This document shows positions 4,493 to 62,157 of a stretch of 64,000 bases of DNA, in pieces. Source of the DNA: Leucoraja erinacea (Eukaryota); contig NC_073391.1 in NCBI RefSeq assembly GCF_028641065.1, positions 36,022,001 to 36,086,000 on the forward strand, read 5' to 3'. The number at the start of each line of letters is the position of its first letter. Position 1 is the stretch's first letter. The notes beneath the pieces were generated by a model. It was given only the letters and a program-made list of their open reading frames with translations, had not been told where the DNA came from and made no database searches. Both the position numbers and the translations under genes were made by a program.

Positions 4493-4614
4493 AAAAAAGA
4501 CAAAGTGCTGGAGTAATTCAGCAGGTCAGGTAGCATCTCTGGAGATCACGAATAGGTGATGTTTTGGATTATGACCCTTGTTCAGACCAGCATCTGCAGT
4601 TTCTTGCATCTTGC
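4493..4614. mobile_element. PLE-derived mini-element (degenerate)
   Basis: Family arm sequence, flanked by ATCAATTG(A/T)TTT direct repeats at 4481-4492 and 4615-4626. Confidence 0.65.
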
Positions 4615-4880
4615 ATCAATTGTTTTTGTCCATTTCAGTAGCACCTCTGCTGATTATGGTGTTAGTAAAGGTACTATAAATAAGCTATTGGAAATCGAGT
4701 TCAGACGCACATGCACTTCACACTTGGGATGCACTAATACTCCTCCTTTTTGTCTTATTGACTAATGCAGAATCTAGAGAAGTGTTGAAACCACCAGATC
4801 CTTCCAAGTTGTCAACATAATGTTAATAGAATGGCCGATAACCAGAAACGTTTTTGGCAAACCAACACAAAACAAACCTT

Positions 4881-5043
4881 GTGTAGGAAGGAACTGCAGA
4901 TGCTGGTTCAAACCAAAGATAGACAAAAAATGCTGGAGTAACTCATCAGGACAGGCAATAATGTCACGTCAACCACGTGTACCGAAAAGACACCCATTCC
5001 TTCTTTCCCGAGATGCTGTATTAATCCAGCATCTTGTGTCTAT
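4881..5043. mobile_element. PLE-derived inverted-pair mini-element (centre deleted)
   Basis: Inverted arms, with TSD AAAACAAA(C/T)CTT at 4869-4880 and 5044-5055. Confidence 0.7.
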
Positions 5044-5120
5044 AAAACAAATCTTAATTTATTGTTCATTAATGTTCACAACTTTAATAGGATCACTAAA
5101 CCCCATCATTTAACACATAC

Positions 5121-5363
5121 CCCAGCTCCAGTGAGGATCATGATTTTCTTGCTTTCCTTCAAGATTCTCACCACATCCTCCAAGGAATTAATATCTTTGC
5201 GCTTTTTTCCGCTTTGGTGGCTCTGACAAAATATTGAGAACAATCTGCCAGAGTGTCATGTCGTCCAGATCTGATGGAGGACTGTTCCCTCGCAATAGAT
5301 CCTTCAGGATAGACCGTGGGTCTGTACCCAACATAAGATGTTGCTGGACAAAACTATATGGAC
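5121..5363 (-). CDS. SIRT1: SIRT1 coding exon 3 (243 nt as given; contains an apparent +1 frameshift)
   Basis: (G)PYSFVQQHLMLGTDPRSILKDLL...DLDDMTLWQIVLNILSEPPKRK[+1]KRKDINSLEDVVRILKESKKIMILTGAG. AG at 5365-5364, GT at 5120-5119. Confidence 0.95.
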
Positions 5364-6423
5364 CTAGTTGGAAAGTTAAAAATGAAAAAATTAAAACTTT
5401 AATAATTTAAGCATAAAAGAGTGTGAATATAAGCAACATTTCCATTCAACTCACCACAGATGTTCCATCTTATCATTACCCCATGATTCCTTTTGAAAAA
5501 ATAAACCCATGGACACGTTAAAGCTTACACTCCTGCCATTAATGCCTCTGGGTAAACATAGCAAATGGGGTTTATTGAAATCAGTTTCCGTAGGGAATAA
5601 ATGATTTTATAATCTAGGAAATTAACAATGAAGAGGTTGCCTTTGACCATAATTCTTCCCAACAAAATGCTGGAAAAACAGAAACTTGCATACAACAATT
5701 CAAGAAATATGCCATGACATTTCCTAGGAGTGCAACCAAGCCAAGAAGAATAGACACACTAGGAACTACAGATGTTGCAATCTTGAACTAAGTACAAAGC
5801 GCTGGAGGAACTCAGCGAGTGAGGGAGCCTTTGTCAACTTTTCAGGTTGGGACCATTCTTCCATGCAGAAGGAGGGAGAAATCTGGAAAAGGGTGGTAGG
5901 AAAAAGCCTGATAAGTGATAAGTAGATATGGGGTTGGGGGAAGGTTAGCAGATGTGTGCAGTTGGTGACAAAAGCAAGAGTTGAAAAAGACACAAAAGGG
6001 CATCAGATAAGAAGCGAAGAGGCATGAAACTTAAAGTTAGGAGGAGGGTTATAGGTGGAAAGAGACATCTCCCGACTGGGCATGTCATCATATTGTGGAG
6101 AAAAGTTTTGTTACATTGAGATAACTCCAATTTCAAAGTAAAAATTATGAATCTATGATGAGGAAAATCTGAAATCTCAAAAATGGTCTGTGCTTATATA
6201 ATGCCCATCATCTTATTAATAGTGATCATACTTAAAAAAATGGTTGATGACAGGGCTGTGCGTAACATTGGGTACAATCAGATTGAGATACATAAACAAA
6301 TTAACAACAGACATAATTAGGGTAGCAAAATAACCTGGCTTGCAAGCACTATATTTTTCTACCAGTCAATGAAATTTAAATAATTGAGCAAGAAATAATC
6401 TCCAATTACATATTAAACATTAC

Positions 6424-6558
6424 CTATCCGAGCATGAGGGGTCCAGTCACTTGAGCTGGCGTGAGAGGTTTTGTCATCTTCATCACTTTCCCACGAGCGA
6501 ATCCCATTTGGAATAACTTCCTCAGGAGCAGCATTTCCTGAATACACAGATACACCAT
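6424..6558 (-). CDS. SIRT1: SIRT1 coding exon 2 (135 nt)
   Basis: (D)GVSVYSGNAAPEEVIPNGIRSWESDEDDKTSHASSSDWTPHARI(G) matches the ESDE..SHASSSDWTP motif of vertebrate SIRT1. Phase 1/1. Confidence 0.93.
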   Translation of the reverse strand: MVYLCIQEMLLLRKLFQMGFARGKVMKMTKPLTPAQVTGPLMLG

Positions 6559-8275: not shown

Positions 8276-9170
8276 CCGGCGAGGGTCAGGGGTCAACCGG
8301 GGTGAACAACAACAAACAAACAAACACCCGAGATAGACACAACATTGCTGGAGTAACTCAGCGTCCCCGGAGAGAAGCCCTTCTTCAGTCAGGGGAGAGG
8401 GAGACGAGAGATATGGAAGGGTAAGAGGTGTAAAAACGACAGATCAAAGGAGGGGGTTCACTGCTGATGCAGGACACCGCTCAGGGAAACGAAATTTCGG
8501 TCAGACCGAAAGGTCTGAATGACAAATCAATTCAATTCAATACATGACCCGCAGGTTCTCAGTATCATCCCGATTGCAGCTTCTCCAACATCAGCAGTCT
8601 CTTATCAAAATCATTTAGCATGAAACGGGTAATTCTGCCCACAACGTTCACACACACCAGCAAGCACCCATCCGCATTGATCTCGTTTTCCTGCACATGC
8701 AAATACTTGTCTCATCACTTAAATGCTGCTCTCTGCTTTCATCACCTGGTGGGTGAAAATAGTCCCTCTCAGATCCCCTAACCTTTTATCTATATCCTCT
8801 ATTTGTATTTATCTCAAATATGGGAAAGTGTCCTGAAGAGTTAGCATTTCCTCAAGAAAACTTTGAGCGTAATCTTTGAATTTTTTTTCAGTCTCTTCTC
8901 ATGATAGGACTCCAATTCTGTCATGAGAGTATGATGTTGAGCATGCAAACTACAAGGGTTGCCCAACTTAGTCAACCAAATTTATCTAACAACCCTAGAG
9001 CTGGGCCTAAAGGACATCACTAACAATGATTCGCTTGTCCTTCCAATGAATTTCATAATCATAATCATACTTTGTTAGCCACGTTTGTTTTGCAACATAC
9101 GAGGAATTTCATTTGCCATACAGTCATACCAATAAAAAGCAACATAGCACACAAAATATATTTGCCTATA

Positions 9171-12930: not shown

Positions 12931-13875
12931 GAGCATATGAACCATGCAGAGGACAGCAGTGTAGACCTAATTGGTTTTTCCGGTGCAATTTATTTTCTAC
13001 ATAGAAATGATGCAAGAAAATGTAATGTCCGCAAAAATAAACGGTGTGGAAATTGGAAACGAAAACATATCGGGAGGCACAAAGAAACAGATGTATCACA
13101 CGTGCGTCAAGAATGAATAAATAAACCAGATCTGGGTGCATCGGCAAATAATTATATAAACACACGTGTCCAAAAACACGGTGGAATTTCAGACATTTTT
13201 TTCATTCCTAAAAATCAAAGGAGATCAACGGTCTACTGCTCGTTCCCAAACAGATAAACTCTAAACATCAAATCCCTCCGGACATCATATCCCTTCATGG
13301 CTTCGCCTGCCTGTCAAACCTACTCTAGCTCCACAACGCAATATTTGTGTTGCAAATTTCACCTCTCGTGCATTTTACCCCTGGAAGGAAACCTACCTTC
13401 CCGAAACCCACCTCCGGTTTCAGTACCTGGCCGAGCAAACGTTGGGTATCGTCGAGGCGCACCCGTGAAGTTTCTTGGGCCATTTCACCCCTTTAAAACG
13501 GCCTTCAACGCATGTTAGAATACAGCGTTTCCTCTTGAGATGCACATCTTATTAAGACTGGCAAGAAAACCTTACAAAATGCTGGCGGAACTCTGCGGTC
13601 GGGCAGCATCTCTGAAGGGAATTGGATAGACGAGTTTTTGGGTCGCAACCCATCTTCAGACCCGTCTCTGCTCAGGGCTGGCGGCAGCCCCTGAGAGCGG
13701 GGTGCATTGCATTCCATGGCTGGGGAACCGGAGCGCTGACGACCGCTTGTTGTTGACCAGTTGCCCCAAGCTCCAGGATACTCCCCCGAGACGAAATTCC
13801 CAAGAGGTGGAGACTGGCCGTGTGGTGTCATCGTCCGGCACAGGGCGAGTGGGCGGTATATCCGCTCGGCAGTTC

Positions 13876-14013: not shown

Positions 14014-16095
14014 GTGAGAAAGTTCCGCTCTAACAGACCTCCGCGTCACGTTATTTAATGGGGCCAAAGTCCTTCAGATGGCCAGTGTGCCTCCTAGTGG
14101 GGATTGTTATGGTAGTGAACGAGACCGGCTGTATCCTAGTGTCGTCTCTTTAGTCTCTCAGTACCTGCCAGTGAGCACCACAGCTCGACCAATGCAGATA
14201 CGTATGTATTTTAAAATCGGCTTCTAACTATCTCCGGTTAGTTTCATGTTACAGAAAGCCAATCCATATCTCAGTGGATAGGGGTAAACTTGCATCATAA
14301 ATGTGGACCAGCAAACAAGAAGATGTTTCTCGACTTGAAACGTCACCTATCCATGTTCTCATGAGTTTCTGTATGACCTGCTGTGTTACTCCAGCTCTTT
14401 GAGTCCTTTAGTGTATTAACCAACATCTGCTCCGCTCTATGATCTTTGATCTGCAGTTCTTTGTTTCAGTGTATTCTTAACTTTAGTTTGGGCTGTGAAG
14501 ACACTGTCAAAGCCAGCATTTATTGCCCAACAATAATTATTTCAGAAACTGTTGGTTGGCCAACTTCTTGAATTGTTTAAATCATTTTGGTGAAGATACC
14601 TTCCACGGTCTTGTTGGTAAAGAATGCCTGGATTTAGACTTGCTGATAATGAAGGATTGTCAATATATTTCCAAATTGGGATCTTGTGTGACTTGGAAGG
14701 GACACTGCAGGTGAATGTGTTTCCAAGCACCTGCTGCCCTTATCTTTCTTGGTTGTGGAGATCATAGATTAGGGCGATTGCGTTGGAACTGTCTAAGTAA
14801 CTGCATTGCATTTTATAGCTGGTAGTGGAGCAAATGAATGTTTAGAGTGGTGGATGAGGTGTGAATCACACAAGCTGCTTGGTGCTGAATGTTGTTGAGT
14901 TTCTTTGTTGGCGTTTCATTCATCTAGGCAGCTAGGGTAGTATTTTCTCATGCCTCTGACTTGTGCTTTGTAGATTGTGGTAAGATCTTGTGTTTGTTAG
15001 GAGATCAGAATACTGAGCCATTGAACCAAGCCTGTAGTCACAGAATGTAGTTTCCTCATTCACGTGAAATGGTGGTCCATTAAGACCCATTCATAAAAAT
15101 AACATCAAATAAAAATATGAGATCATTTGACTCTCTTGTTGGAAATGGGCATTGCTGGGCACATTTTTGGTGCATATGTTACTTGCCATTGACCAGCAGA
15201 TGCTTGAGTGTTATTGAGGTCTTGCTGCATGCTGGCATAGGTTGCTTCATTTGCTAAAGTGTTGTGATAAGAAGTGAACTTTGCACAATCTTCAGTGAAT
15301 ATCCCTACTTCTGCCAAAAGGTAGTAATTGATGACTGGCATGCAGCATGTATGATTAAACCATTATGAAGAATAAACTAACTCCACTTTGTCCTCAACAA
15401 TCTACCTGTGGCAGATGCATTTGTCCTTAAAAGGGTTGGTAGAAGTGAACACTGCACAGTCCTTGTGGAGACAAACTTAAGTCTTCACACATGGACATTC
15501 TCTATCATGTTGAATGCCATTACAGACATGTTCAATTGGGTAGAATAGAGGGCAGCTCAAAGCTGTGCTTCATTAAAGCACCCTGGGCCAGTTCAGACAC
15601 TAGTGGTATTACAAAGCATCTCATGATGATGCTTATTTAAGCCCCCTCACTTGTAGTACATGCTGTGCACTTGTTACTGTCAGCACTTACTAGGGCACGG
15701 CAACCGGCAACAGCCTAACTCATCCGTGCTGCCCAAGATTCCCCATCAAAGCTAGTGTTTGGTCCCTATCCCTCTAATCCTTTCCTATCCAAGTACCTGT
15801 CCAAGTGTCTTTTAAATGGTGTTCTAGAACCTACCTCTTCTGGCAGCGTTCCATATACCTACCAGCTTTTGAGTGAAAGAGTTGCCCCTTAAATTACTAT
15901 TAAATCTTAAAAGGAAGGAACTGCAGATGCTGGTTAATACAGGTGCTGGAGTAACTCAGCAGCATCTCTGGAGAACATGGATGGGTGATGTTTTGGGTCG
16001 AATCGGAAGAAGGTAGCAATTGACAAAAGATTTTTCGACATCACATTCTAAACCTGTAACCTTCACTGCCTTTGAGGATGAGGCCAGTGGTGAGT

Positions 16096-16403: not shown

Positions 16404-17347
16404 TTTGATAAAAAGGTACATGTCAAAAAGTTGGACAACATCCTGGCTTTGACAAATATCAATATCCATTTTTCCTTTTTCGATTTGACTGGCTGCTTTC
16501 ACCTGACAAGCTGCAGTATTGTGAGAAGGCAGCTCAAACTATCTATTTGAATAATTGGGGATGTACAATAATACTGGGTTCGGCAATAATGTCCACAATC
16601 CAAGACTTTATTAAATTATATATTGAAATGTCCCTGAAAAAAAATGTTCTCCTTCTGCCTCAATCGAAGCACCCTCTTGATGATATATGTTTGGCTAATT
16701 CACTACAGTAGAGTATGTTTTCCCCGGCAGCAGCTGAAGCTAAGACACTGGAGCAGTAATGAGGAAGGATTGAGACAAAGTCTAGCTAGGGGATTATCTG
16801 TGGACTTTATCATAATGTATTAGATCCTGTAGTGGTGTTAACTGAATTGGTGTTGTGTGTTCCTGGGGTCTCAAACCCCAGGCACCTGCCAGGTATTACA
16901 ATATACAATCTTTGCTTTCATTTGGCACTTTTAAAGTTGCAGATTCCAATAAATTTGTGCTAAAGATGATGGTGTGTGGGAAGTGTGCATTGTGTTTTCA
17001 AACAGATTCAGGCAGAAATATTTAAATTTCTTTCTTTCTTCCTCTGTTATATTGCAATGAATCAGAGCAGTGTCATTAAAATACAAATTAAAATCTTATT
17101 CTGAGAATGTGACGCAGTTCCCAATATTTACTGCTGTACCTGCAAAGGCCAAGTACTCACTGTTGCCTTGGAGCATGTAATTACATCAAGGAAAGCATAC
17201 ACTTCCTGAATACAAAAATAAACTAACCAGAAGAAGAATAAATATGAAAAAGGAAATGCTGCCTGATAAGTTCAGCAATATTTTTCGGATGACATTGGTG
17301 ACTTAATGTTTGGCTTCAGAGCTGAAGTTATGTAATAATGAATGTTT

Positions 17348-17534
17348 AAGAAGGAACTGCAGATGCTGGAAAATCAAAGGTAGACAAAAATGCTGGAGAA
17401 ACTCAGCGGGTGAGGCAGCATCTACGGAGCAAAGGAAATAGTGTGAAGAAGGGTTTCGGCCAGAAACATTGCCTATTTCCTTCGCTCCATAGATGCTGCC
17501 TCACCCGCTGAGTTTCTCCAGCATTTTTGGCTAC
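17348..17534. mobile_element. PLE-derived inverted-pair mini-element abutting the DNAJC12 exon 2 acceptor
   Basis: Inverted arms, degenerate hammerhead core, 18-bp TSD ATGTAATAAT(G/T)AATGTTT at 17330-17347 and 17535-17552. Confidence 0.85.
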
Positions 17535-21400: not shown

Positions 21401-22058
21401 GTGGACATTTTGTGCTGGAGATTTCCATCCTCCCGTTTACCTCGAGCAAGCTTTTACAGCCAATCCCTTTGAAATGTACAACATTTTGAATAAGGGTCTC
21501 GACCCAAAACGCACCCATTCCTTCTCTCCAGAGATGCTGCCTGTCCCGCTGAGTTACTCCAGCTTTTTGTGTCTAAAATTCTTAAAGGGCTTGACAGGGT
21601 AGATGCTGAGTGCTTTTTTTTCCATGCCTGGTGTCCAGAAGCAGGGTCGGTCACAACATACGGAGTCGGCCATTCAGGACAGGTGAGAAATTCCTTCATC
21701 CAAAGTGTTGCAAATTTTTTGGAATTCTCTACCCAAGAAGGATACGAGGTCAGTCACTGACGCCACCGAGGATGTCAGGGTGACACATCCGGGACAGATT
21801 CACTATTTAGTTCTCCTTCACATGAAGCTCATTTCCAATTAAATATCGTCCAGACATTTTGAAATTGTATTTGTGATTTCCAAGCCTGAAGCTTATGGAA
21901 CCTAAAAATTATAAGTAGTACTAGTGAGTGGTATAGAGTAGAGTATTATCTTGGGGTATCCTGGAGTTTCAGGCTGTGGAATGATTAGGGGATTTGGAGG
22001 TGTGGAATGTCAGAGAGGGTCAGAAAGTCTATAATGGGTATGTTAGAGGATTGAAGGT

Positions 22059-22355
22059 AAACACAAAACGCTGGAGTTACTCAGCGGGACAGACAGCTGG
22101 TGAGAAGAAATGGGTGACGTTTCGGGTCAAGATACTTCTTCAGACTGATGTCAGGGGAATGAGCGGTACAGAAATAAAATATAGTCAGAGACAGTAAGAC
22201 TGGTCGGAGAACTGGGAAGGGGAGGGAGAGAAGGGTTACTTGAAGTTAGAAAAGTCAATGTTCATACCGCTGGGGTGTAAGCTACCCAAGCAAAATATGA
22301 AGGGCTGTTCCTCCAATTTGTACTGGGCCTCACTCCGACAATGGAGGAGGCCCAA
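22059..22355 (-). mobile_element. Penelope-like element 3' remnant: endonuclease C-terminus plus pLTR with hammerhead motif
   Basis: 22346-22236 reads LHCRSEAQYKLEEQPFIFCLGSLHPSGMNIDFSNFK*, resembling the PLE GIY-YIG C-terminal E..I..L..L.P.G.N motif. Followed by CTGAAGA..GAAACGTC and the family arm. Confidence 0.75.
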
Positions 22356-22455
22356 GATTTAGGGGATTGGGTGGGTTGGGGGTTTGATGTATACTGGAGA
22401 GAGCAGGAGATTGTCAGAATAACTAATCAAGCTCTGTTTTATTTCTATAATCTAG

Positions 22456-40682: not shown

Positions 40683-41518
40683 AATAGTTGTGATATAGGG
40701 GGGGGGGTTTAAATTTCCCAAATATTAACTGTGATTGTCATTAGTGTCAGAGGGGTGGTAGCGGAATTTAAGAAATGTGGCTGGGAGAGCTTTTTGATAA
40801 AGTATCTTGATAGACCAGTGAGGGAAGGAGCAGAACCCTCATGGGGAATGTAGCTGTTCAGGTGGAGGGAGTGTGGGAGCATTTTTGAGATAGTAACTCT
40901 GCATATTTTAAAATTATGCATAAGGATGGATCAGGAATAAAAGCCTTGCATTGGGGAAGGTCAATTTAATTAGCATATGAGAGGACCCGGTAAGGGTAAA
41001 TAGGGAGCATGTACCTGAAGGTAAATCTATAATTTGCACAGTGGGCAGCATTCAAAGATAAATGAATGGGAGTTCATGGGCAATATTGGCAATCTTCCAG
41101 TCATCTTGTATCTCTCACTTGTATCAAGCAGTGATTTAAAACCCTCTGCCAGAGCTCCAGCAATCTTTTCCCTTGCCTACAAGGGATGAGAATCCAAGAA
41201 TAAATCAGTTTCTTTCCCTTCTACTCACTCCATCTGTCCAATGCCCCACATTTCTTGCCGTGTGTGGCAACCCACCACTGTTTCCAACCACTCGCCCACC
41301 TCCCTTATTTAGTTCCATATTTCACCTTTTCCCATCAGGTTTGATAATCTAAAGCCCTTTGCTACCTCCATCTATCATCTCCCGGCCTCTGTCACTATTT
41401 CCATCCTTCCCTCACCCACCCCGATGAAGAATCCTGATCCTAAACGTTGGTTATCCATTTCCCTCCACAGTTGCAGCCTGACCCTTTGAGTTCCTCCAGC
41501 AGATTGTTAGATAGTGAA

Positions 41519-41614
41519 AGTACACAAAAATGCTGGAGAAACTCAGCGGGTGCAGCAGCATCTATGGTGCGAAGGAAATAGGTAAAGTTTCGGGCCGAAA
41601 CCCTTCTTAAGACC
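41519..41614 (-). mobile_element. Solo PLE arm
   Basis: Exact 15-bp TSD TTGTTAGATAGTGAA at 41504-41518 and 41615-41629. Hammerhead core mutated. Confidence 0.85.
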
Positions 41615-47755: not shown

Positions 47756-47758
<3 letters not shown>

Positions 47759-50919: not shown

Positions 50920-51545
50920 GAGGTGGCACAGTGGGTCAGCGGCGAAGTTGCTGCTTTACAGCTCCAGAGACCCGGGTTCTATCCTGACTACTAGTGTTAT
51001 ATGTACTGAGTTTGTACATCCTCCCTGTGACCGCAGGGTCTGAAGAAGGGTTCTGACCCAAAACATCACCCATCCTTTTTCTCCAGAGATGCTGCCTGAC
51101 CTGCTTAGTTACTCCATCACTTTGTGTTTATCTACCTGTGACCACGTGGGTTTTTTCCGGGTGCTCGGGTTTCTTCCCACATTCCAAAAACATATAGATT
51201 TGTAGGTTGCCCCCTCTCTGTGATTTCCCCCCCTGCTCTCCTGCCCCCTCTCCCCCCCCCCCCCTGCCCTCCTGCCCCCTCTCTGTGATTCCCCCCCTGC
51301 CCTCCACCTATTTCCTTCGCTCCATAGATGCTGCTGCACCCGCTGAGTTTCTCCAGCGTTTTTGTGTACCTTCGATTTTCCAGCATCTGCAGTTCCTTCT
51401 TGAATACATAGATTTGTAGGTTAATTAGCTTCTGTAAATTGTCCCTAGGGTGTAGGATAGAACTAGTGTACGAGGTGATCGTTGGTCGGCACGGACTCGG
51501 TGGGACAAATGGCCTGGTTTCATGTTGTATCTCTAAAATACTAAA
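50920..51545 (+). mobile_element. HE1-like SINE carrying two PLE mini-element insertions
   Basis: Insert 1 is flanked by CCTGTGACC (51024-51032 / 51135-51143). Insert 2 is flanked by ATAGATTTGTAGGTT (51194-51208 / 51408-51422). Confidence 0.85.
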
Positions 51546-52186: not shown

Positions 52187-55100
52187 GTTAGGCTTTGCAT
52201 TTTCTAACAAACCATCAGCACGTGTAGGCTGCTCTGCTATAAAGATCTTTTATACTTTTATAAATCAGGGACATTCGGCAAAAACTCCATAAACCCATTG
52301 CTCCTCCCATCACCCCTCTACCACCCACCCCCCCCCCCCCCCCCCCCCCCCCCCCAAATAACGTGGACTGCACACGGCCTACAGCGGTGGAGCAATGGAC
52401 GAGGAGCGGTGGAAGAAACCGCAGCTATGTGTGGCCAGGTAGACCCTGCAATGCTGCCAGAAATTGGGAGAGATGAAGATTCCTGGTCGGAATGAAAAAA
52501 ACTCGGTATCATGTTAAACTTAGTATTCTTTGAGATGACGGAGACATAAAAGGAGGGAACCGAGGAAATTGAGACTCATCACTCGGTTGAAGAGAAATGA
52601 GTCTGTTGGGATGAAGAAATTGTTCACCTTAACTCAAATTAATCTGCAAACTCCATGAAGAATTATGCTGAAAATTTAGTTGTTGATGGAGCTCGGCTTG
52701 TTTCTCAGAGCGCTATTTGGCCCTCTGCACCAGTTAAGATCTTACCGGGATAGTTTTGGAATAAATCTAAATGCACCTACACACAAAGATAAAATTCTGT
52801 GCAATTGTACACTGTCGGGAAGCATCCCCACCATCAACCACAGAAACCGAGGGCTACCCTTCAGTTCGTAAGGGTGCTAGTGGCCGACTTGAAGGAAGAC
52901 CTGGCAGATCGCCCATAGCTACTGAAGGTGGTAGGACCGGCTTGCTGCCCTAAAGAAGGAAGGACCTAGCTGGCTTCTGCCTGTTGTGGGGAGCTCGGAA
53001 GCTGCCGAGCTCGGCTCCAAAGACAGAAGAATCAAGTAGGAGAGAGCCGCTGGTGATGGTGGATGTGAGGAATGGGGCCCCTAGGAGAGGGACTAGGGTA
53101 TTGCCTCCAGCGCCTTCAAGGTCGGCTACCCTGGGACACAGAGGCGGTCTGGTGAGGAGAGGGCGACAGAGGAGGCCCAGCATGGCCTGGGGCTAACCTG
53201 GATCGGGAGCTGCTCCACAACACTGATCACGCGGACAGGACTTTGGACTTTCCCGTAAATGGTGCCAAAATATGGCAATTCATACACACGTGAATTATGC
53301 AAAGACAATTTCACTGCACAGTGTATATGTGACAATAAAGTACCATTGAGACAACATTCTTCCTGCTCACCAACCCACACCATATTACTCGCAACATGAT
53401 CTCTTTGGATCATGGCTATGGAATTATGGGGCAGAAGAAAAAGGAATATCAAAGATTTTGTTGTTTTTAGTCAACATAGCTGGAGACAAAAGGAGCAATC
53501 TATAAACATCTATATGCTTTGTTTTCAAATCTCTTGGCAATGCTGAACAATTATATTTTGCAGGACGTTTATTTTGCAGGACGTTTGTAGGGAGCATGTG
53601 CCTACAAAATGCTGACAAACTGCAGAGTCGCTGAAATAGTATACAGCTACTCTGATTTCACTGAATAGCATGATTTTATATTCACATGGATCTATAACTG
53701 GCTAACTCAGCATCCAGTCACAAAAGACAACTATGCCAGATTCCCCAAGTTGCACAATGGTCAAATGATGTTGACTTTTCAAAAGGCTTTGAAGCCAGCC
53801 TAATGACTAGCAGTATCAGAGATTACCTGCACAAACTGAGCTACAGGCATGGTGTGGTTTTGATCTCCATCTATAAGGGTATACTTACATTGGAAGGAAT
53901 GCACAGAAGATGACTACATTAATTTCTGTGATGTGAAAGATCGTGTGGATCGGACCTAATTATTAGAGTGGTGAATATTGAAGATTCTGAGGGAACTTGA
54001 CAGGGAGGATGATGTGAGGTGTTTCTCCGAGTGGTTGGATCTAGAAATAGGGATCGTAGCCCACGGGTTCGTTAAAGAATGAGATGTGGTGTGTATGAAA
54101 AGGGTTTTGATACACCAACAGAAATTTTAGATTGCCCTCTCAAGATACCATGAACATTTTTTCCACAATTATTTGCACCACTTCTACTCCCCACCTTATT
54201 TGAGACCCTCCTGGGGTAACCAGGAGCAAGGGGAGATCAGTCGTGCATGTTTTGCTGGAGGCTTTCCAAGATAAGTAGGATGAAGGGAACAGACCAACAA
54301 CAGAAATGCAACAAAAGCTTTTCAGGCCAAGGGGAGCTGTGGTTGCTCTAGGACAAGGAAAGGCTGGAGGGACAGATCCAAGAAGAGCTCCAGATGACTG
54401 GAGAACATTGTGCTGTTGTTTGATCAGGGAGGAAGGGACCAATAAACAGTTGCAGGCCATACAAATAAAATAAAACTGCAGATGCTGGAAATCTGAACTG
54501 ATACCAAATGATGGAAACACTCAGCAGGTCAGGCAGCATCCAAGTAAGGAAAATGAGAATTAACATTCCAGGAAAAGACCCTTTGTCATAATTGGAAAAT
54601 AGAGAAAACAAGTGATGTTTCAGTTGCAGAGGTGAAGAGATGGGTAGGATAAAAAGAATGCCTGTGATAGAGTGAGGTGAGGATTGCCATGGAGATTTGT
54701 TGTGTGGGGCAAGTTTTTTACACGGTGTGAGTGCCCGGAATGTGCTGACAGGGTTGGAGGTTGAAGCAGATACGTTTGCGTATTTAAGAATTCGTATGTG
54801 CAGTGTATGGAGGGATAGGAGTTATGTAAAGGTAGATAAGTGATGATCATTGTAGGTGAAAGGCCTGTTTGGCATAGACATTGTAGGTGAAAGGCCTGTT
54901 CTTGTGCTGCACTATTTCTGTTCTATGATCTAACCAGTACACATTGAGCCCCACTGCAATACTTCCTTTGAGGACACTGATGGCCTGTTCTCACATACCC
55001 CTTAAACACACTGGGAACCATTCTCACACATGAGGGCCCCGTTCTCATGCATCCTTTAAGCAAATTATTATACCACAGTATGACATTTAAGTCTAGATTA

Positions 55101-56295: not shown

Positions 56296-57984
56296 TTTGA
56301 TGAAAGGAGGAATAATGTGTGAATTGTGTGTGGATTTATAACGTATTTGTTTCTATAATGTGATATACTTAATTGTTCTGATAACTTTAACCTTCATGAG
56401 GCTGCTTTATGCATTTCTCATATGGACCACTGGCCAAAATGTAATAGGCAATGTATGAGGAACCAGGTGTAAGGATTCTGGAAAAATTGAATGTTGCTAG
56501 AAAATGTACTTGAATTCAATTAATTAATTATTCTGCACTCCTTTGCAATTGTGAAGGGCATGCACAAATCAATGATATGACATTATTATGGTTTTACCAT
56601 TGGCAGTGCTAAATGTACTATTTGTATCATGGTACATATTCACAGGGTGCAACCGATGGTGTTGAGTTCCAGTTGAAATTAGCTGGCGATAATTAAAGTT
56701 GCATCTGCAACTAAAAGGGGTCTTTGCTAGGTCTTGCACCAAAATGTAAACACTTGTTGTTGTTCACAACAGTACCTTCCCCTCAAATGACCCCCGGCAG
56801 ATGTATAGGAACACCATCAATTGCAGGTTCCCTTCCAACTCGTATACCATCCTGACTTGGAAATACATATCTGTTAATTTTTCACTGCTAGTTTCAAATC
56901 TTGAAACTATCCGTGTACGGAACAGTAGAAATGCATTCTCCAGTTGGTCTGCAGTTGTTCAAGAAGACAGCTCACCACCATCTTCTCGAGGGCAATTGCG
57001 AAGACCCGACAAGTGTTGGTGTTACCAGTGAAACTCATATTATGGACAATAAACTAAAACAAAGTCAGACAAGTATTTTGACCTTTATCTGGGGCATCAG
57101 TCTGAGTTCTGTATTATGTTGAGGATCTGTCTACATTTGTTACTCTTAACTCAAGCACTTTGCTGTTCATGGCAGTAACTTGGCACATTAGTATGAATGT
57201 CTTTCTGTAGGAAGGAATGAAATGTGAGCAGCCCACGAAAGCTTCTAAATATAGGTGCCATTGCTGGCAGCTTGTGGGAGATTGGAGTGCGGGTAGTGTT
57301 CAGCTTTGGTTGGAATGCAGTAAGTGGTCTGGTCGCTCTAATCACATTGAAGTGGAGTGCCTCAGAAGGAGCAGATAGTTTTCCCTAAATGGGCTGAGAT
57401 AGAATCTGGCCTTTTCCAAGTGATCTTAAAGTTACCCAACTTTGAAATTCTATTGCACGGCACAACGCTGATATGCACCGCAATACCTATTTTCGGCTGC
57501 AGTAGAAACTTGCTACCGTGATTTTCATTCACACATGTGGCCCACTGTGGCCTTACTCATTGAGAACCAAAACTGGAAAATGCTGGGAAGGCTTAGAAGG
57601 GCAGGCAGCATCATTGGGCTGAAGAAACCAAAACGTTTCAGGTCCTTTGTCGGAAATTGTTTCATGAGACATGTGAAGCCTGCATTGACATAAGGTCAAG
57701 CAGTCTGGGATGCCATTACATGTGGTTGATGCTTGGAATTGGCGACAGATAGTTCAAGAGGCTTCAATATCGCCCAACATCCCCGCATCTCTCACAAACA
57801 TCACTTTCCAACCTGGTGACAATCCTGCCCTGCTCTGGTTACCAAGCCCCCACCATTCATCCACCCACCTTGCCTGTTGTCATCATCCTTTGGGCTTTGA
57901 ATACTACTGAATTTTGCGGCACAGTGGTGCCAAAAAAACCTTAATGGAGCTCTAACATGCACATTCAAAGCAAGACTTTCCAGT

Positions 57985-58190
57985 GTGTAGGAATGAACTC
58001 CAGATGCTGGTTTAAATCGGATAGACACAAAACGCTGGAATAACACTGCGGATCAGACAGCATCTCTGGAGAAAAGGAACACAAAGAGCTGGAGTCGGTC
58101 TGAAGAAAGGTCTCGACCCGAAACGCCACCTATTCCTTTTCTCCTGAGATGCTGTCGGACCCGCTGAGTTACACCAGCATTTTGTGTCTA
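57985..58190. mobile_element. PLE-derived inverted-pair mini-element
   Basis: Inverted arms. Plus-strand core GGT CTGAAGA AAGGTCTCGACCC GAAAC GCC ACC. Confidence 0.8.
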
Positions 58191-59514
58191 TTTACAGTGA
58201 ATTTTATGGCCATTGCACAACAGATATGTGCAATATGTTTACTTGTGTGTTATGACCCATCAAATGGAAAGGAGAATTCAACAGAATTATAAAATATGCT
58301 GAGTGATTTATAGCTAGTTTGCACAAGGCTGTTTAACCTGGGATTCCTGGAATATTAGTGCAAGCTGCGCTGAATTAAACAGGAGGAGTTTTGATTTTTA
58401 TTCATTCATCGACTGCACCTTGATTGTGAGGATTGGTTGATATGATGTGAGAAGTGAATCTGATCAATGAAGAGATCACTTTTATTGATCAAGAGAGCTG
58501 TTGCAATGTAGGGTGGTTGTGGCGTTGATTGATTATAGATATGACATCAGGATAGGGGACATGGGTATCGAACATGAGTGGGGATAAGATATCGGACATT
58601 GGAAAATATTAGTTTTTATAAGAACAAATATATCGTCAAGTTGAGTTTATTGCCATATGCACAAGCACGGAGACGTACAGGTATAAATAAAATCTTGCAT
58701 ACAGCATCACCACAGACAAATGAGCTCGGTCAATGCACAAAAACATAAATTATACATAATTTACACACAAATTTTACAACTCGGTGAAAAGAAAAAGAAT
58801 GCAAAAAAACAACGCAGTTAAATAACAAATCCGTGATCGTCCAAAAGACAGTCAGCAATGTTCCTTGGCTGAGGGAGGTTTAAGCTTATGGAAATCAGTT
58901 AAAGAACCTGTTGGTTGCAGAAAGGTAAATGTTCCTGAGTCTGAGGGTGTGGAACTTCAGACCTCTGTACCTCGATGGTGGCATGGGCCAGTGTGGTGAG
59001 GATCCTTGATGTTTGATGCTGCCTTCCCGAGGCAGCAACGCGTATAACTGCCAATCGCAGTCAGGTGGGACTAGTGTGGATAGGGCATATTGATCAGTGT
59101 GGGACAAGTTGTGCCGAAGGACCTGTGTCCATGCTGTACGACTCTATGAGGTGATTTTGGTGGTGGGAAGGGGTGTGCTCATGATGGACCAGGCTGCATT
59201 TAACAGTCTCTGTAGCCCTTTGCATTAGAATTGCCATACCAGACCAATGATGCAACCAGTCAGGATACTTATTCCAGTGCATTTGCAGAAGTTTGTTTGA
59301 GTTTTCAGTGAGATGCTAAATCTCTTCAAACTATGACATTAAGGATGCTGGCAAACCTTCTTTATGATTACTTCTATGTACTAGTCCCAGTACAGGTCAT
59401 CTGAGATCCAGAAATTTGAGCCATATAAATCAGGACCAGATGTATGTAGGCCACTCGATCTCTCCACAAATATTCCACTATCATCACACTATTCCACAAT
59501 AAGATTATGGCTGA

Positions 59515-59744
59515 AGATAGACACAAAATGCTGGCGTAACTCAGCGGGACGCGCAGCATCTCGGGAGAGAAATGGGTGATGTTTCGGGTCAAGACCCTTC
59601 TTCATATCTGAAGTCTGAAGAATGGTCTTGTCCCGAAATGCCACCCTTTCTTTTTCTCCAGAGATGCTGCCTGTCCTGCTAAGTTACTCCAGCATTTTGT
59701 GTCTGTCTTTGGTTTAAACAAGCATCTGCAGTTCCTTCCTACAC
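59515..59744 (+). mobile_element. PLE mini-element: inverted arm, direct arm, 36-nt extension
   Basis: Exact 14-bp TSD AAGATTATGGCTGA at 59501-59514 and 59745-59758. Confidence 0.9.
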
Positions 59745-59930
59745 AAGATTATGGCTGACCTGATTGTAACCTCAATTCTACATTTCACTCCCTTTCTGTC
59801 GCAAACCCACAGTATCTTATGCTTCAATCAAGTCCCCATTCTAAGCTCCAGTGGATTCAAGCTCTGCCTGTCCATTATTTCTTCATTTGGGCAATCCAAA
59901 CATTCTAGATGTTGGTGTAATAATTGGGCA

Positions 59931-60241
59931 CAGGCTGCACAATGGTACGGCGGTAGAGCTTCTGCCTCGTAACTCCAGAGACCCGGGTTCAATTCTGGCT
60001 GTGAGTGCAGCCTGTGCGGAGTTTGCACATTCGCCCTGTGGGTTTACACTGGGTGATTGGGTTTCCTCCCACATTCCAAAAACATGCCGGTTTGTATGTT
60101 AATTAACTTTTGTAAATTGCCCCTAGTGTGTAGGATGCAAAACTGGGATAACATAGAACTAGTGTATGGGTGATCGATGGTCGGCGTGGGCTTAGTAGGC
60201 CAAAGGGCCTGTTTCCAAGCTGTACCTCTAAACTAAACTAA
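59931..60241 (+). mobile_element. HE1/V-SINE-like SINE
   Basis: tRNA-like head (GGTAGAGC..CCGGGTTCAATT), central domain, (CTAAA)n tail. Confidence 0.8.
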
Positions 60242-60399
60242 ATGTTCTTCATTAAATATGGAAACCAAGCTGATCATTCTCTCAGCAATACTCTTTATGT
60301 GAAGCATAAATGCCTTAATTTTCCTGCCAATAAATAAAACTGTTATGTTAGCTTTTCTAATTCCATGGGAATTGATCAACCAGCCTCCTTAATGCATAT

Positions 60400-61155
60400 T
60401 CCTCTAAACCTTTGCTATCCACTTTATTTTATCTCTAGTTACCCTTTTCCCTTACTGTAAAATCTCTTTGGATTCTTCTTATTCCTATCCGCTGGAGCTA
60501 TCTTCTATGTCCTTTTTCACCTCCAATTTCCACAATCCCCTATACTCCTCCATGGATACAGTTGATCTCAGCTGCCCGTACCCGATCCATGCCCCCCTCT
60601 CTTCCCCTCTTCTCGTTAACAGCAATATTTATATCTTGAACTCGTCATCACACTTTTAAAATCATCCAACTTTCTGGACGCTCCTTTACTAAAAATCAAG
60701 CTACCCCTGTCAACTTGAGCAAGTTCTTGTCTAGTTCCATCAAAGTTGACCTTGCTCCAATTTGGAATTTTAACTAGTTGGCCTGCCCTGTCTTTATCCA
60801 TAACTATTTTAAAGCTAATAGAACTGTCCCAAAAGGCTCGCCCACTGACACTTCACTCGCTTACCTAGCCCAATTCACGAAGAGTAGGTCAAGCTTTGCC
60901 CTCTCCCTTATAGAGCCCTCTACATATTGCCTAAGGAACTTTCCTGAACACACTAGACAAATTTCACCCTATCTAATCCCTTGGCACTACGGCAGTCTAA
61001 ACCCCCACAACCACAAACCTATTTATCTTGCAGCTGTCTGCAATCTCCCAGCATATTTGTTCCTCGAATTCCTATTGACAACTTGGGAGCCTATAGGTCG
61101 AGCTTTGCCCAATGCCTTGTATGGCCTTCTATATGGTTCCCTTCCGGGGAACTAT
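60400..61155 (-). mobile_element. Decayed CR1 endonuclease/tether fragment
   Basis: MDKDRAG..VKI.NWSK.NFDG.RQELA.VD, homologous to 36160-36290. Confidence 0.7.
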
Positions 61156-61449
61156 TTGTAAGGCAGTGTCTCTGCAAGTCAGAAATGTCTGTTTTCTACA
61201 GCTATCCATAATATCGGTCTACAATCACTTGCTATATTGTTTTCATGTAATTGAATAACAACCCTAACACTACCCATAATAAAGTTAATGGAATATTTAC
61301 AGTATTCAGTCGTGATAAATACCACAAAACATTTTATTATCTGTATTACCAGCTTGAAAAATGTTTAAAACATGTATTGGAGTAATTTGTCCAAAGCTGG
61401 ATTCCCTTCCATTAGGTGTTTTATCATCCAGGGAGCCCCTGTAATAGTG

Positions 61450-61644
61450 TTCAGGGTACACAAAATTGCTGGAGAAACTCAGCGGGTGCAGCAGCATCTA
61501 TGGAGCAAAGGAAATAGGCGACGTTTTGGGCCGAAACCCTTCTTCAGTCTCAGTCTGAAGAAGGGTTTCGGCCCGAAACGTCGCCTATTTCCTTCACTCC
61601 ATAGATGCTGCTGCACCCGCTGAGTTTCTCCAGCAATTTTGTGT
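61450..61644. mobile_element. Near-perfect palindromic PLE mini-element
   Basis: ~91-bp inverted arms with a 7-nt spacer. Exact 16-bp TSD AGCCCCTGTAATAGTG at 61434-61449 and 61645-61660. Confidence 0.92.
61552..61586 (+). ncRNA. Candidate minimal type I hammerhead ribozyme (PLE-type)
   Basis: CUGAAGA (61555-61561), extra A, stem II GGGU-UUCG-GCCC, GAAA (61575-61578), CGUC with predicted cleavage after 61582. Helix III is reduced to palindromic ACGU and stem I is weak. Confidence 0.6.
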
Positions 61645-62157
61645 AGCCCCTGTAATAGTGGTGATGTTGAAAATTCAAAGTCAATGTTGCGAGGGTAATA
61701 CAGTAACAAGAGTCAGCTTAAAAATATATATAAACTGGGCAAATCAAATTACCACCAATAATGTGGAGCATGAATTCCTGGAATGTATATAAATTGGATT
61801 TCTCGTTAGATACATTAAGGGACTGACAGGGGAATAGGCTGTATTAGATCTAATTAAAATGAAAACACCCTGCTGATTCTGTAAGTCTAAAATTTTTTTT
61901 TTAAAAGAGCTGTAAATATTCAGTTGTGAAGGCCACATCTGTGGGAAGAGAAACGGACAATGTTTCAGGTCGAAGACCCTTTCTCAGAACTGGGAAAGAC
62001 AGGAAAGAAACTTGCTGAGCTGCAGAGAAGGTAGGAGAGGGACGATTTATCTGATAGAATAAAAACAGGGTGAGCATGGTTACCTGGTCATTAAGTGATT
62101 AGGTAAGATTGGAGAACAAGTACATAGGCAAAATAATCCTTGGTTAGTAAGCTTACT

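What the first reader, a model, noticed from the sequence alone, without database searches (positions are those of the whole stretch)
4493..61990. Window-wide family of tiny Penelope-derived mobile elements built around a minimal hammerhead ribozyme motif
Seen: more than 20 copies of one ~90-130 bp arm (e.g. 4493, 4881, 13570, 14325, 17348, 21488, 22059, 28202, 28695, 31285, 32510, 41519, 46220/46390, 51033, 57985, 59515, 61450). Each arm begins with CTGAAGA-A-[stem-loop]-GAAA-CGTC or a decayed form. Stem II stays largely paired while its loop varies (GGGT-CTCG-ACCC, GGGT-TTCG-GCCC, GGGT-TGCG-ACCC, GGGT-CTTG-ACCC, GGGT-CCCG-ACCC, GGGT-TCTG-ACCC). At 51036 the flanks GGGT/ACCC close a stem I. 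Copies have variable 9-18 bp TSDs and no poly-A. Established: CUGANGA..GAAA..NUH is the hammerhead core, and Penelope-like elements carry minimal type I hammerheads in their pLTRs with a vestigial palindromic helix III thought to need dimerisation. Inference: this is a hugely amplified PLE-derived, ribozyme-bearing short-insertion family, about one copy per 3 kb, seeding introns with hairpins and latent self-cleaving motifs. I cannot tell whether it is already catalogued for this lineage.
Basis: partly seen in the sequence, partly recalled or inferred. Interest (0 to 1): 0.85.

Follow-up and report, generated by a model that had tools for sequence, protein, structure and literature searches.

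The report
Penelope retrotransposon tails with hammerhead motif
The window is peppered with short end-pieces of a Penelope-like jumping gene that carry that group's already described minimal hammerhead-ribozyme motif; it is an ordinary kind of repeat and most copies here have a broken motif.

Summary
The repeat family is real. An 18-nt family word has 28 hits against 0.02 expected. BLAST finds 37 fragments covering 5.7% of the window. Each unit runs from just upstream of CTGAAGA-A-stemloop-GAAAC-GTC to one of two 3' ends, about +95, or about +135 with a 40-nt "tail". Copies have 10-18 bp target duplications and no poly-A. Eight are head-to-head inverted pairs, and seven of those carry the tail on one arm only. 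These are the published hallmarks of Penelope-like element (PLE) insertions.

One copy (22074-22358, minus strand) continues upstream into the C-terminus of a GIY-YIG-type endonuclease ORF.

The hammerhead core is better conserved across copies than its flanks: 0.84-0.87 against 0.70. But helix I is only 2 bp, there is no covariation, no Rfam hammerhead hit, and only 2 of 18 heads are intact. RNA reads show no pile-up of ends at the predicted cut.

So the PLE origin is supported, while "latent self-cleaving" is doubtful. The scan noted this family before on other DNA of this genome, with hundreds of notes and two follow-ups reaching the same reading. Verdict: a new member of a known kind, of low interest.

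The parts
4493..4614 (.). Inverted unit: full arm on the minus strand (4500-4587, decayed head) abutting only the last ~25 nt of a plus-strand tail; ~12-bp TSD
4875..5041 (.). Inverted pair: minus arm 4875-4957 (starts ~+58, with tail), 20-nt filler, plus arm 4978-5041 (starts ~+12, short end)
5802..5863 (-). Diverged arm with decayed head
8337..8430 (-). Arm with an internal deletion; upstream it continues into C/T-rich sequence like the PLE 3'UTR
13574..13661 (-). Solo arm, short 3' end, head starts at -2; G12 lost
14319..14430 (+). Solo arm with partial tail, starts ~+3
15912..15997 (-). Solo arm, 5'-truncated (~+17), with tail
17343..17529 (.). Inverted pair: minus arm starts +31 and has the tail; plus arm has the head and a short end; 18-bp TSD (1 mismatch)
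21478..21574 (+). Solo arm, decayed head, short end
22074..22358 (-). Longest copy: endonuclease ORF C-terminus 22239-22358, stop codon, ~95-nt 3'UTR, head 22116-22143, short 3' end; ~15-bp decayed TSD
27795..28059 (-). Second, frameshifted GIY-YIG endonuclease relic (includes the YIG-type motif region); no recognisable hammerhead tail after it
28205..28305 (-). Solo arm of the young subfamily; core and helix II intact (GUU site); starts at -8; 14-bp TSD
28697..28771 (-). 5'-truncated arm (~+9)
31287..31494 (.). Inverted pair: minus arm with head (-4) and short end; plus arm starts ~+21 and has the tail
32215..32775 (.). Cluster of fragments: 32215-32320(-), head fragment ~32511-32560(+), 32583-32660(-), 32696-32775(-)
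33313..33427 (-). 5'-truncated arm (~+15) with tail
41439..41613 (.). Two independent arms tail to tail: older 41439-41507(+), and younger 41521-41613(-) with its own perfect 16-bp TSD
42188..42281 (+). 5'-truncated arm (~+7)
46224..46427 (.). Inverted pair: minus arm reaches -27 into 3'UTR-like sequence and has the tail; plus arm 46387-46427 is cut short at +37
51036..51133 (+). Solo arm starting at the C of CTGAAGA; the preceding GGGT belongs to the ~16-bp TSD
51208..51403 (+). Insertion with 17-bp TSD: 96 nt of C-rich 31-nt repeats, then an arm from ~+27 to the tail; no hammerhead
54474..54593 (-). Old diverged arm with tail
57984..58189 (.). Inverted pair: minus arm starts +34 and has the tail; 15-nt filler; plus arm with head and short end
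59514..59750 (.). Inverted pair, both heads present; tail on the plus arm only; perfect 14-bp TSD
61455..61646 (.). Youngest inverted pair (arms 95% alike); plus-strand head 61555-61582 fully intact, minus-strand head has G12>A; perfect 15-bp TSD
61900..62030 (-). Old diverged copy whose upstream side is C/T-rich, like the PLE 3'UTR

Best explanation
These are insertion products of a Penelope-like retrotransposon (PLE: reverse transcriptase plus C-terminal GIY-YIG endonuclease). Each 'arm' copies the stretch of PLE RNA that runs from a few bases upstream of the element's minimal hammerhead motif down to one of two alternative internal reverse-transcription start sites. One site lies about 95 nt downstream; the other lies about 135 nt downstream and adds the 40-nt 'tail'. 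The likely sequence of events is as follows. The PLE enzyme cuts the target with a 10-18 bp stagger. It starts cDNA synthesis inside the RNA, so there is no poly-A. It copies toward the RNA's 5' end and most often stops at one recurring point, -9 to +3 of CTGAAGA. Often a second, inverted and usually more truncated copy is laid down on the other strand, which gives head-to-head hairpins. The hammerhead motif is inherited from the master elements, where it appears to be kept by selection; in the inserted copies it decays like neutral DNA. Shown here: the family, its ends, the TSDs, the inverted pairs, the one-sided tails, the link to an endonuclease ORF, and the decay. Inferred from published PLE biochemistry (PMC11167929, PMC8557442): the internal initiation, the two-strand priming, and the reason for the recurring 5' end.
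For: - Family and density.
- Variable TSDs and no poly-A.
- Inverted pairs: 8 head-to-head pairs, 7 of them with the ~40-nt tail on exactly one arm. This matches the published PLE signature: high 5' truncation, an adjacent inverted 5'-truncated copy, and a 30-40 bp tail at one end (PMC8557442 passages); and two adjacent internal RT start sites that explain the tail (PMC11167929 main text).
- ORF link: copy 22074-22358(-) runs from the head through ~95 nt of 3'UTR into an ORF end.
  - Its 40-aa peptide finds 32 proteins at E<=1e-3 in 1.84 billion, best 1.4e-9 at 72% identity, always at or near their C-terminus.
  - I scanned the 10 longest of the 32. GIY-YIG is the recurring Pfam family: 4 of 10, one above the cut-off and three at 17-19 bits. 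It also hits 3 of 5 endonuclease-region sequences.
  - The ESM Atlas places that region with GIY-YIG clusters (0.96; 24 of 30 hits), and by structure with a chordate cluster carrying RVT_1+HTH_animal+GIY-YIG (TM 0.87).
  - Hit P0029 reads from the same ORF end on into ...LKKGLGPK..., the translated head. That is an independent ORF-to-hammerhead link in another public sequence.
  - A second endonuclease relic lies at 27795-28059(-).
- 5' ends: 4 of 37 arms continue upstream into C/T-rich 3'UTR-like sequence. 15 of 37 start at -9..+3 of CTGAAGA. None starts at the base after GUC (read by eye, +/-3 nt).
- RNA: reads that run upstream past the head most often continue with ...C-rich...ACA|TCAGT, as in the 22k copy's 3'UTR (table 7, four runs).
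Against: - No PLE-type reverse transcriptase and no full-length element lie in the window. The RT fragments found by tblastn look LINE-like, and hit P0007, which joins such an RT to the endonuclease, is probably a chimeric gene model.
- The Pfam GIY-YIG scores of the closest relatives are below the curated cut-off, and a PDB profile search found nothing.
- The link between head and ORF rests on one copy in the window plus one database protein.
- The sharp 5' boundary is not explained by simple random 5' truncation.
Confidence: 0.85

Rival explanations
1. The short units are a self-propagating non-autonomous lineage (retrozyme-like or SINE-like). Short master copies made only of head plus tail are transcribed on their own and mobilised in trans by PLE enzymes, rather than being by-products of full PLE RNAs.
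For: 15 of 37 arms begin at the same point, -9..+3 of CTGAAGA, and only 4 of 37 reach further upstream (by eye). There are several subfamilies of different age: identities 91-95%, 80-92% and 66-78% to the two reference arms. [quoted passage not shown]
Against: There are no tandem arrays of the unit in 64 kb; the only related tandem is a post-insertion duplication of tail plus flank. RNA reads lie on both orientations about equally, and none of the four runs shows molecules starting at the boundary (tables 2 and 6). Many RNA reads continue upstream into PLE 3'UTR-like sequence (table 7). A recurring 5' end is equally explained by the 5' end of the PLE's own RNA.
Confidence: 0.25
2. The inserted copies are latent, functional self-cleaving hammerheads that cut the intron RNAs carrying them.
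For: The core boxes, the extra base before helix II, the G10.1-C11.1 pair, the GUC site and the palindromic ACGU are all present in the best copies (61555-61582, 28270-28297). Published PLE mini-hammerheads cleave weakly as dimers or with the PLE protein (PMC4209133 text; PMC11167929).
Against: Only 2 of 18 heads keep core plus helix II, and 7 of 18 lost G12 through CpG decay. Helix I is 2 bp, against 4-5 bp in the published descriptor families. There is no hammerhead hit in Rfam at gathering score, nor at E<=10. The predicted MFE of the intact head is a different fold that pairs AGAAGG of the core: -10.7 against -4.5 kcal/mol. Single arms fold no better than shuffles, z from -1.8 to +0.8. In inverted pairs the core is paired to its own antisense arm. 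No pile-up of RNA ends appears anywhere in 57900-61750 in four RNA runs, with sensitivity of a fifth of local depth. No arm starts at the cut site.
Confidence: 0.07
3. The CTGAAGA...GAAAC block is conserved for a reason other than catalysis, for example as a protein-binding or RNA-pairing site of the PLE, and in this family it only resembles a hammerhead.
For: Helix I is vestigial, and covariation does not exceed shuffles. A second block (AGATGCTGC...CCAGCAT) is nearly as conserved, 0.79. HHR mutants do not affect insertion in vitro in the anole PLE, and some very successful PLE clades lack the motif.
Against: The pattern of conservation is the one a hammerhead predicts: core boxes 0.92 and 0.90 (without CpG columns), stems 0.86, loop 0.67. 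The four non-descriptor features listed by Cervera and de la Pena are present.
Confidence: 0.2
4. A foldback or MITE-type DNA transposon with terminal inverted repeats.
For: Many copies are near-palindromes that Rfam's miRNA-hairpin models hit weakly.
Against: TSD length varies from 10 to 18 bp. Solo arms have their own TSDs (28.2k, 41.5k, 51.0k). The arms of a pair are unequal, with variable inner truncation, fillers and a tail on one side only. One copy runs into a retroelement ORF.
Confidence: 0.02

Closest known systems
Minimal hammerhead motifs (min-HHR) in the pseudo-LTRs of Penelope-like elements (Cervera & de la Pena 2014, PMC4209133)
   Same: CUGANGA and GAAA boxes; no helix III or loop 3, with a palindromic 15.2-16.2 (here ACGU); an unpaired base between A9 and helix II; a G10.1-C11.1 pair. 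The motifs are massively dispersed as single copies, and dual motifs lie 100-700 bp apart on opposite strands. They are found in fishes, coelacanth, amphibians and reptiles.
   Different: Helix I here is 2 bp. The paper reports 4-5 bp for most families and 2 bp only for the Drosophila virilis variant. Helix II is 4 bp rather than the 6-8 bp described for several PLE families. I saw no cartilaginous-fish example in the parts of the text I read; the supplements were closed.
Poseidon PLE of Anolis carolinensis (PAc), internal initiation of reverse transcription (Frangieh et al. 2024, PMC11167929)
   Same: The hammerhead lies about 100-130 nt upstream of two adjacent internal RT start sites, and the difference between those sites is the optional 'tail'. 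Both target strands are cut and extended. Targets are AT-rich. Uncleaved RNA is the template. No RNA-seq reads end at the ribozyme cut site.
   Different: In PAc the hammerhead overlaps the ORF start. Here the head lies ~95 nt after the ORF stop, and the arm holds no long ORF. Nothing was tested biochemically here.
General PLE insertion architecture (Craig et al. 2021, PMC8557442)
   Same: High 5' truncation, an inverted 5'-truncated partner, and a 30-40 bp tail at one end only.
   Different: No partial tandem or pseudo-LTR-ORF-pseudo-LTR unit is present in this window. Relatives of the endonuclease carry a CX3-4CxxC linker, which that paper associates with the Neptune and Nematis clades. Clade assignment was not tested.
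Animal non-LTR retrozymes (Cervera & de la Pena 2020, PMC7229834, seen only as a search listing; Li et al. 2026 preprint)
   Same: Short non-coding hammerhead-bearing sequences related to PLE pseudo-LTRs; monomer copies are dispersed.
   Different: Retrozymes are defined by tandem arrays and circular RNAs with canonical type I hammerheads. Here there are no tandem arrays, and the motif is the minimal form.

Membership tests
Penelope-like element (insertion product) | GIY-YIG endonuclease ORF belonging to the same copy | tested here: met
   Copy 22074-22358(-) has an ORF end 95 nt upstream of the head. Its peptide hits the C-termini of proteins whose only recurring Pfam family is GIY-YIG (most scores are below the cut-off, one is above). 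Atlas features score 0.96 to GIY-YIG clusters, and structure TM is 0.87 to an RVT_1+HTH_animal+GIY-YIG cluster.
Penelope-like element (insertion product) | PLE-type (telomerase-like) reverse transcriptase in the element | tested here: inconclusive
   No PLE RT lies in the window. The RT pieces found by tblastn at 11.5k, 25.6k and 37.3k look LINE-like. All copies here are 5'-truncated.
Penelope-like element (insertion product) | 5' truncation, variable-length TSD, no poly-A | tested here: met
   TSDs of 10-18 bp at 10 units, 5' ends from -215 to +113, and 3' ends without A-runs.
Penelope-like element (insertion product) | Adjacent inverted 5'-truncated copy | tested here: met
   8 head-to-head pairs.
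Penelope-like element (insertion product) | 30-40 bp 'tail' extension at one end only | tested here: met
   7 of 8 pairs carry the ~40-nt extension on exactly one arm; the 61.5k pair has none.
Penelope-like element (insertion product) | Partial tandem giving pseudo-LTRs around an ORF | tested here: not met
   No such unit occurs in this 64-kb window. This is expected if only truncated copies are present.
PLE minimal hammerhead (min-HHR) | Core boxes CUGANGA and GAAA plus an NUH site | tested here: met
   They form the majority letters of 18 aligned heads. All core letters are intact in 4 of 18, and core plus helix II in 2 of 18.
PLE minimal hammerhead (min-HHR) | Unpaired base between A9 and 10.1; G10.1-C11.1; palindromic 15.2-16.2 without loop 3 | tested here: met
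   There is an extra A (T in 1) in all 18. G-C at 10.1-11.1 occurs in 12 of 18. The majority reads GAAAC|GTC, which gives ACGU.
PLE minimal hammerhead (min-HHR) | Helix I of about 4-5 bp flanking the core | tested here: not met
   Only two pairs hold (U-A/G in 16 of 18, G-C/U/A-U in 14 of 18). The third and fourth candidate pairs are paired in 8 and 5 of 18. The longer stem at 51036 is TSD DNA.
PLE minimal hammerhead (min-HHR) | Covariation in the helices | tested here: not met
   Helix II has no two-sided changes, only U-A to U-G. All five measures are within the shuffles. The copies are few and related, so the test is weak.
PLE minimal hammerhead (min-HHR) | Self-cleavage after H17 | not testable with these tools
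   Indirect evidence only: no pile-up of RNA ends (table 6), and no arm begins at +29.
Rfam hammerhead families | Covariance-model score | tested here: not met
   There is no hammerhead hit at gathering score in the whole window, nor at E<=10 in 57900-61700. This is expected for a form without helix III.
Non-LTR retrozyme | Tandem arrays of hammerhead-bearing monomers | tested here: not met
   TRF finds no array of the unit.
SINE (pol III-derived) | tRNA-, 7SL- or 5S-derived head | tested here: not met
   Rfam at gathering score finds only one genuine tRNA gene at 31915-31996, and none in the arms.
MITE / foldback DNA transposon | Fixed TSD length and matched terminal inverted repeats | tested here: not met
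   TSDs are 10-18 bp, arms are unequal, and solo arms have their own TSDs.

The most novel reading that the evidence does not exclude
The head-to-head pairs may be fossils of symmetric two-strand priming by a dimeric PLE particle carrying two template RNAs. In that reading the hammerhead motif serves mainly to pair the two RNAs (through its palindromic ACGU) or to mark where copying ends, not to cut. Three observations hint at this. The heads are almost always retained uncut at the inner ends of the arms. The inner junctions cluster at one point. In 5 of 8 pairs the tail-bearing arm is the more truncated one, as if the two strands used different start sites.
Probability: 0.1. Interest if true: 0.6.

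Novelty: new member of a known kind. Interest (0 to 1): 0.18.

Why it matters
Mostly this matters for annotation. About 6% of this window, and by the scan's own notes much of this genome, is made of PLE end-pieces, which should be masked or labelled as such rather than read as ribozyme genes or microRNA hairpins. The copies also form a small natural record of how PLEs insert. They show two alternative 3' start points, inverted partners, one-sided tails, and 5' ends that keep the hammerhead uncut. That agrees with the in-vitro finding that unprocessed RNA is the template. The hairpins sit in transcribed DNA, and family sequences are abundant in RNA-seq. They could therefore feed double-stranded-RNA pathways, but nothing here shows that they do.

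Tried and rejected
- Pattern slip: my first pattern search used a spacer one base too long and missed the family. Searches replaced it.
- Rfam: the gathering search and the permissive search gave no hammerhead. They gave only sub-threshold microRNA-hairpin hits (47.7 bits against a gathering score of 81) on the palindromes, which I take as generic hairpin matches.
- Folding: single arms fold no better than shuffles. My attempt to score a designed hammerhead dimer failed, because the structure is knotted in the two-strand notation. Only the monomer comparison is used.
- Protein evidence: the PDB profile search with the endonuclease alignment found nothing meaningful. I first took hit P0007 (RVT_1 + GIY-YIG) as proof of RT-EN architecture and then rejected it. 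Its RT part matches LINE-like fragments of the window, so the model is probably chimeric.
- The endonuclease relic at 27.8k seemed to end at a ...CAGT like the head boundary. The alignment is too weak to use.
- The TCAGTCT at the boundary fits the initiator consensus as I recall it, but a chance fit is likely and RNA reads give no support.
- Literature: full-text searches for three family strings found 0 papers. Searches for Penelope/hammerhead/shark and for Penelope/elasmobranch/skate listed no paper describing this family in cartilaginous fishes. Dfam and Repbase are not available here. The supplements of PMC4209133, which hold its fish and coelacanth motif families, were closed, so a prior listing cannot be excluded. 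Lunse et al. (PMC5785218) is not held. I know it only through a passage in PMC6765202 and from recall.
- What I saw of each paper:
  - PMC4209133: parts 1-2 of 4 of the text.
  - PMC11167929: outline and the whole main text.
  - PMC8557442, PMC6155905, PMC6765202: passages only.
  - 10.64898/2026.07.22.740005: outline, Results part 1 and passages.
- Host species: not identified by me. Other notes of the scan call it a cartilaginous fish, and my own recollection of similar repeats agrees, but neither was checked.

Full report
**What is there.** The window holds a dense, real repeat family.
- A family-typical 18-mer (at most 3 mismatches) occurs 28 times against 0.02 expected; 0 of 100 shuffles reach that number.
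- The 28-nt head motif occurs 6 times against 0.00 expected.
- BLAST with three copies taken from the window by coordinate gives 84 HSPs. They merge into 37 fragments totalling 3,632 bp, 5.7% of the window, about one per 1.7 kb.
- Three more diverged copies turned up on reading.

**Anatomy of a unit.** Read from head to tail, a unit starts a few bases before CTGAAGA. It continues with one extra A, a 4-bp stem with a 4-nt loop, GAAAC and GTC. After that come a variable ~17-nt stretch, a second conserved block (AGATGCTGC...GCTGAGTT.CTCCAGCAT) and a T/G-rich end.

There are two alternative 3' ends. The short one lies at about +95 (...TTTTGTGT.TA). The long one lies at about +135 and adds a ~40-nt extension ending ...CAGCATCTGCAGTTCCTTC.TACAC. 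No copy has poly-A.

By eye there are at least three subfamilies of different age. They are 91-95%, 80-92% and 66-78% identical to the two reference arms.

**Target-site duplications.** They are clear and variable:

| Unit | TSD |
|---|---|
| 61.5k | 15 bp, perfect |
| 59.5k | 14 bp, perfect |
| 17.3k | 18 bp, 1 mismatch |
| 28.2k | 14 bp |
| 41.5k | 16 bp, perfect |
| 51.3k | 17 bp |
| 51.0k | about 16 bp |
| 22k | about 15 bp |
| 4.5k and 4.9k | 12 and about 10 bp |

**Inverted pairs.** Eight units are head-to-head inverted pairs: 4.5k, 4.9k, 17.3k, 31.3k, 46.3k, 58.0k, 59.5k and 61.5k.
- In 7 of the 8 the long extension is present on exactly one arm.
- In 5 of the 8 that arm is the more 5'-truncated one.

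**Where arms begin.** I set aside the endonuclease relic without an arm and two tandem duplicates of a tail. That leaves 37 arms: 34 of the 37 BLAST fragments plus the 3 read by eye. Positions are by eye, +/-3 nt.
- 15 begin within -9..+3 of the C of CTGAAGA.
- 4 continue further upstream (22k, 46.3k, 8.4k, 62.0k).
- The other 18 begin inside the unit, at +7 to +113, or are unclear.
- None begins at the base after GUC. The nearest are +31 (17.3k) and +34 (58.0k).

**Link to a Penelope-like element.** Copy 22074-22358 (minus strand) runs from its short 3' end through the head and ~95 nt of C/T-rich sequence into an ORF end of 40 codons before a stop.
- That peptide, scored against 1.84 billion representative proteins, finds 32 at E<=1e-3. 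The best is 1.4e-9 at 72% identity, and the match is nearly always at the very C-terminus.
- I scanned the 10 longest of the 32 with Pfam. GIY-YIG is the only recurring family: P0014 is above the cut-off, and P0002, P0007 and P0030 score 17-19 bits against a cut-off of 22.6.
- For four endonuclease-region excerpts plus the window peptide, 3 of 5 match GIY-YIG, best E 2.4e-4.
- The ESM Atlas places residues 262-379 of P0030 with GIY-YIG clusters (0.96; 24 of 30 hits). By structure it places them with a mostly chordate cluster carrying RVT_1, HTH_animal and GIY-YIG (TM 0.87).
- Hit P0029 reads from the same ORF end on into ...LKKGLGPK..., which is the head translated. So the ORF-to-hammerhead order also exists in another public sequence.
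- tblastn with 6 of the 32 hits finds a second, frameshifted endonuclease relic at 27795-28059.
- I reject P0007 as evidence for an RT-EN fusion, because its RT part matches LINE-like fragments.

The structural traits match what the literature gives as the PLE signature. These are high 5' truncation, an adjacent inverted 5'-truncated copy and a 30-40 bp tail at one end (PMC8557442, passages). Two adjacent internal RT start sites explain the tail, and both target strands are cut and extended (PMC11167929, main text).

**Is the head a hammerhead?** At the sequence level it fits the minimal, helix-III-less PLE hammerhead of Cervera and de la Pena (PMC4209133). It has both core boxes, the unpaired base between A9 and helix II, G10.1-C11.1, a GUC site and a palindromic ACGU where helix III should be.

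Mean identity to the column majority across 18 aligned heads from all subfamilies:

| Region | Mean identity |
|---|---|
| First core box | 0.92 |
| Helix II stems | 0.86 |
| Loop II | 0.67 |
| GAAAC-GTC | 0.81 (0.90 without CpG columns) |
| Whole motif | 0.84 (0.87 without CpG columns) |
| Next 17 nt (3' flank) | 0.70 |
| Second conserved block | 0.79 |
| Upstream 12 nt | 0.44 |

Against activity:
- Helix I is only 2 bp, and there are no two-sided changes in helix II. None of the five covariation measures exceeds the shuffles.
- No Rfam hammerhead model hits at gathering score or at E<=10.
- The intact head's predicted MFE fold pairs AGAAGG of the core with CCUUC downstream: -10.7 against -4.5 kcal/mol for the hammerhead-like fold.
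- Arms fold no better than shuffles.
- Only 2 of 18 heads (61555+, 28297-) keep core plus helix II. 7 of 18 have lost G12 by the CpG change CG>CA.

**RNA.** One run search listed RNA raw-read runs under a coded species label. Four of them (X13 and X14 of one study, X16, X9) were laid on 57900-61750 at 90% likeness.
- The arms reach depths of about 600-3,000 per orientation, while unique flanks lie at 0-3.
- 63-98% of the laid reads run on into unlike sequence. They therefore come from other copies, and this shows family-wide presence in RNA rather than expression of this locus.
- The two orientations are about equal.
- Table 6 lists no place where molecules begin or end in excess (threshold a fifth of local depth). 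So there is no sign of cutting at GUC or of a start at the head boundary, at that sensitivity.
- Loose ends upstream of 61550 and 58098 have a C-rich consensus ending ...ACA or ...ATCA before (TCA)GT, as in the 22k copy's 3'UTR. Loose ends and joints beyond the short 3' end spell the tail.

**How it most likely works.** A PLE ribonucleoprotein cuts the target with a 10-18 bp stagger. It starts cDNA synthesis internally at one of two sites ~95 or ~135 nt downstream of the hammerhead and copies toward the 5' end of the RNA. The copy usually ends at one recurring point just before the motif. A second cDNA primed on the other strand gives the inverted, usually shorter partner.

The anatomy is shown here. 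The enzymology is inferred from PMC11167929.

The arms keep the whole uncut motif and none starts after GUC. So the fossil record here agrees with that paper's finding that unprocessed RNA is the template.

Why the 5' ends cluster is open.

**Comparison and novelty.** This is the known association of minimal hammerheads with PLE termini, published in 2014 for many animals including fishes and coelacanth. The insertion architecture was described in 2021 and 2024.

I found no paper on this family in cartilaginous fishes. However, Dfam and Repbase were out of reach, and the supplements of the key papers were closed.

The scan itself has noted the family on many other pieces of this genome: 652 notes fit 'hammerhead' and 443 fit 'Penelope'. 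Two follow-ups reached the same reading. Those are leads, not evidence; I re-tested their main points here.

Verdict: a new member of a known kind.

**Limits.** No full-length element and no PLE-type RT lie in the window. The ORF link rests on one copy plus one database protein. The 5'-end tallies are by eye. Covariation tests on related decaying copies are weak.

Noticed in passing
window 31915-31996 (-): A tRNA gene with a long variable arm (Rfam tRNA, 66.6 bits, E 2.8e-12) sits among the PLE fragments. Another note of the scan calls it tRNA-Ser conserved to human.
   Followed up: no
window 31443-31713: Tandem duplication (period 141, 1.9 copies, 88% matches) made of the PLE tail plus its flanking DNA. 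It arose after insertion and is not a retrozyme-like array.
   Followed up: partly
window 51208-51403: An insertion with a 17-bp TSD has a 5' part of three C-rich 31-nt repeats joined directly to an arm that starts at about +27. The hammerhead is absent although 3'UTR-like sequence precedes the arm.
   Followed up: partly
window 61559-61595 (RNA reads): In all four RNA runs some reads 'go back 34' (61592>61559, 61595>61562). Some expressed copies elsewhere therefore carry a 34-nt direct duplication of the helix II-GAAAC-GTC region. These are roughly 1-3% of local depth.
   Followed up: no
window 59061-59189 and 60093-60350: Another repeat family is present in RNA at depths of 30-450. Reads join 59076 to 60198, so other copies lack the 1.1 kb between them. 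That stretch contains the 59.5k PLE pair and is thus a later insertion or nest.
   Followed up: no
window 11459-11701 (+), 25567-25857 (-), 37240-37606 (+), 34838-35236 (+): LINE-type reverse-transcriptase fragments (tblastn with P0007's RT part), and an ORF that looks like a LINE ORF2 C-terminal region.
   Followed up: no
the 8 inverted pairs (4.5k, 4.9k, 17.3k, 31.3k, 46.3k, 58.0k, 59.5k, 61.5k): In 5 of 8 pairs the arm carrying the 40-nt tail is the more 5'-truncated arm. This is a possible asymmetry between the two priming events, but the numbers are small.
   Followed up: partly
window 61548-61557, 28297-28305, 22143-22150: The bases at the recurring 5' boundary read TCAGTCT, which fits the initiator (transcription start) consensus as I recall it. 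No RNA read starts pile up there.
   Followed up: partly
window 3505-4200, 7760-8305, 9421-9886, 17879-18482: GC-rich stretches give long low-complexity ORFs on both strands (Pro/Gly/Ala/Arg-rich). They may be CpG islands or another repeat.
   Followed up: no
window 47718-47762: A run of 45 C.
   Followed up: no
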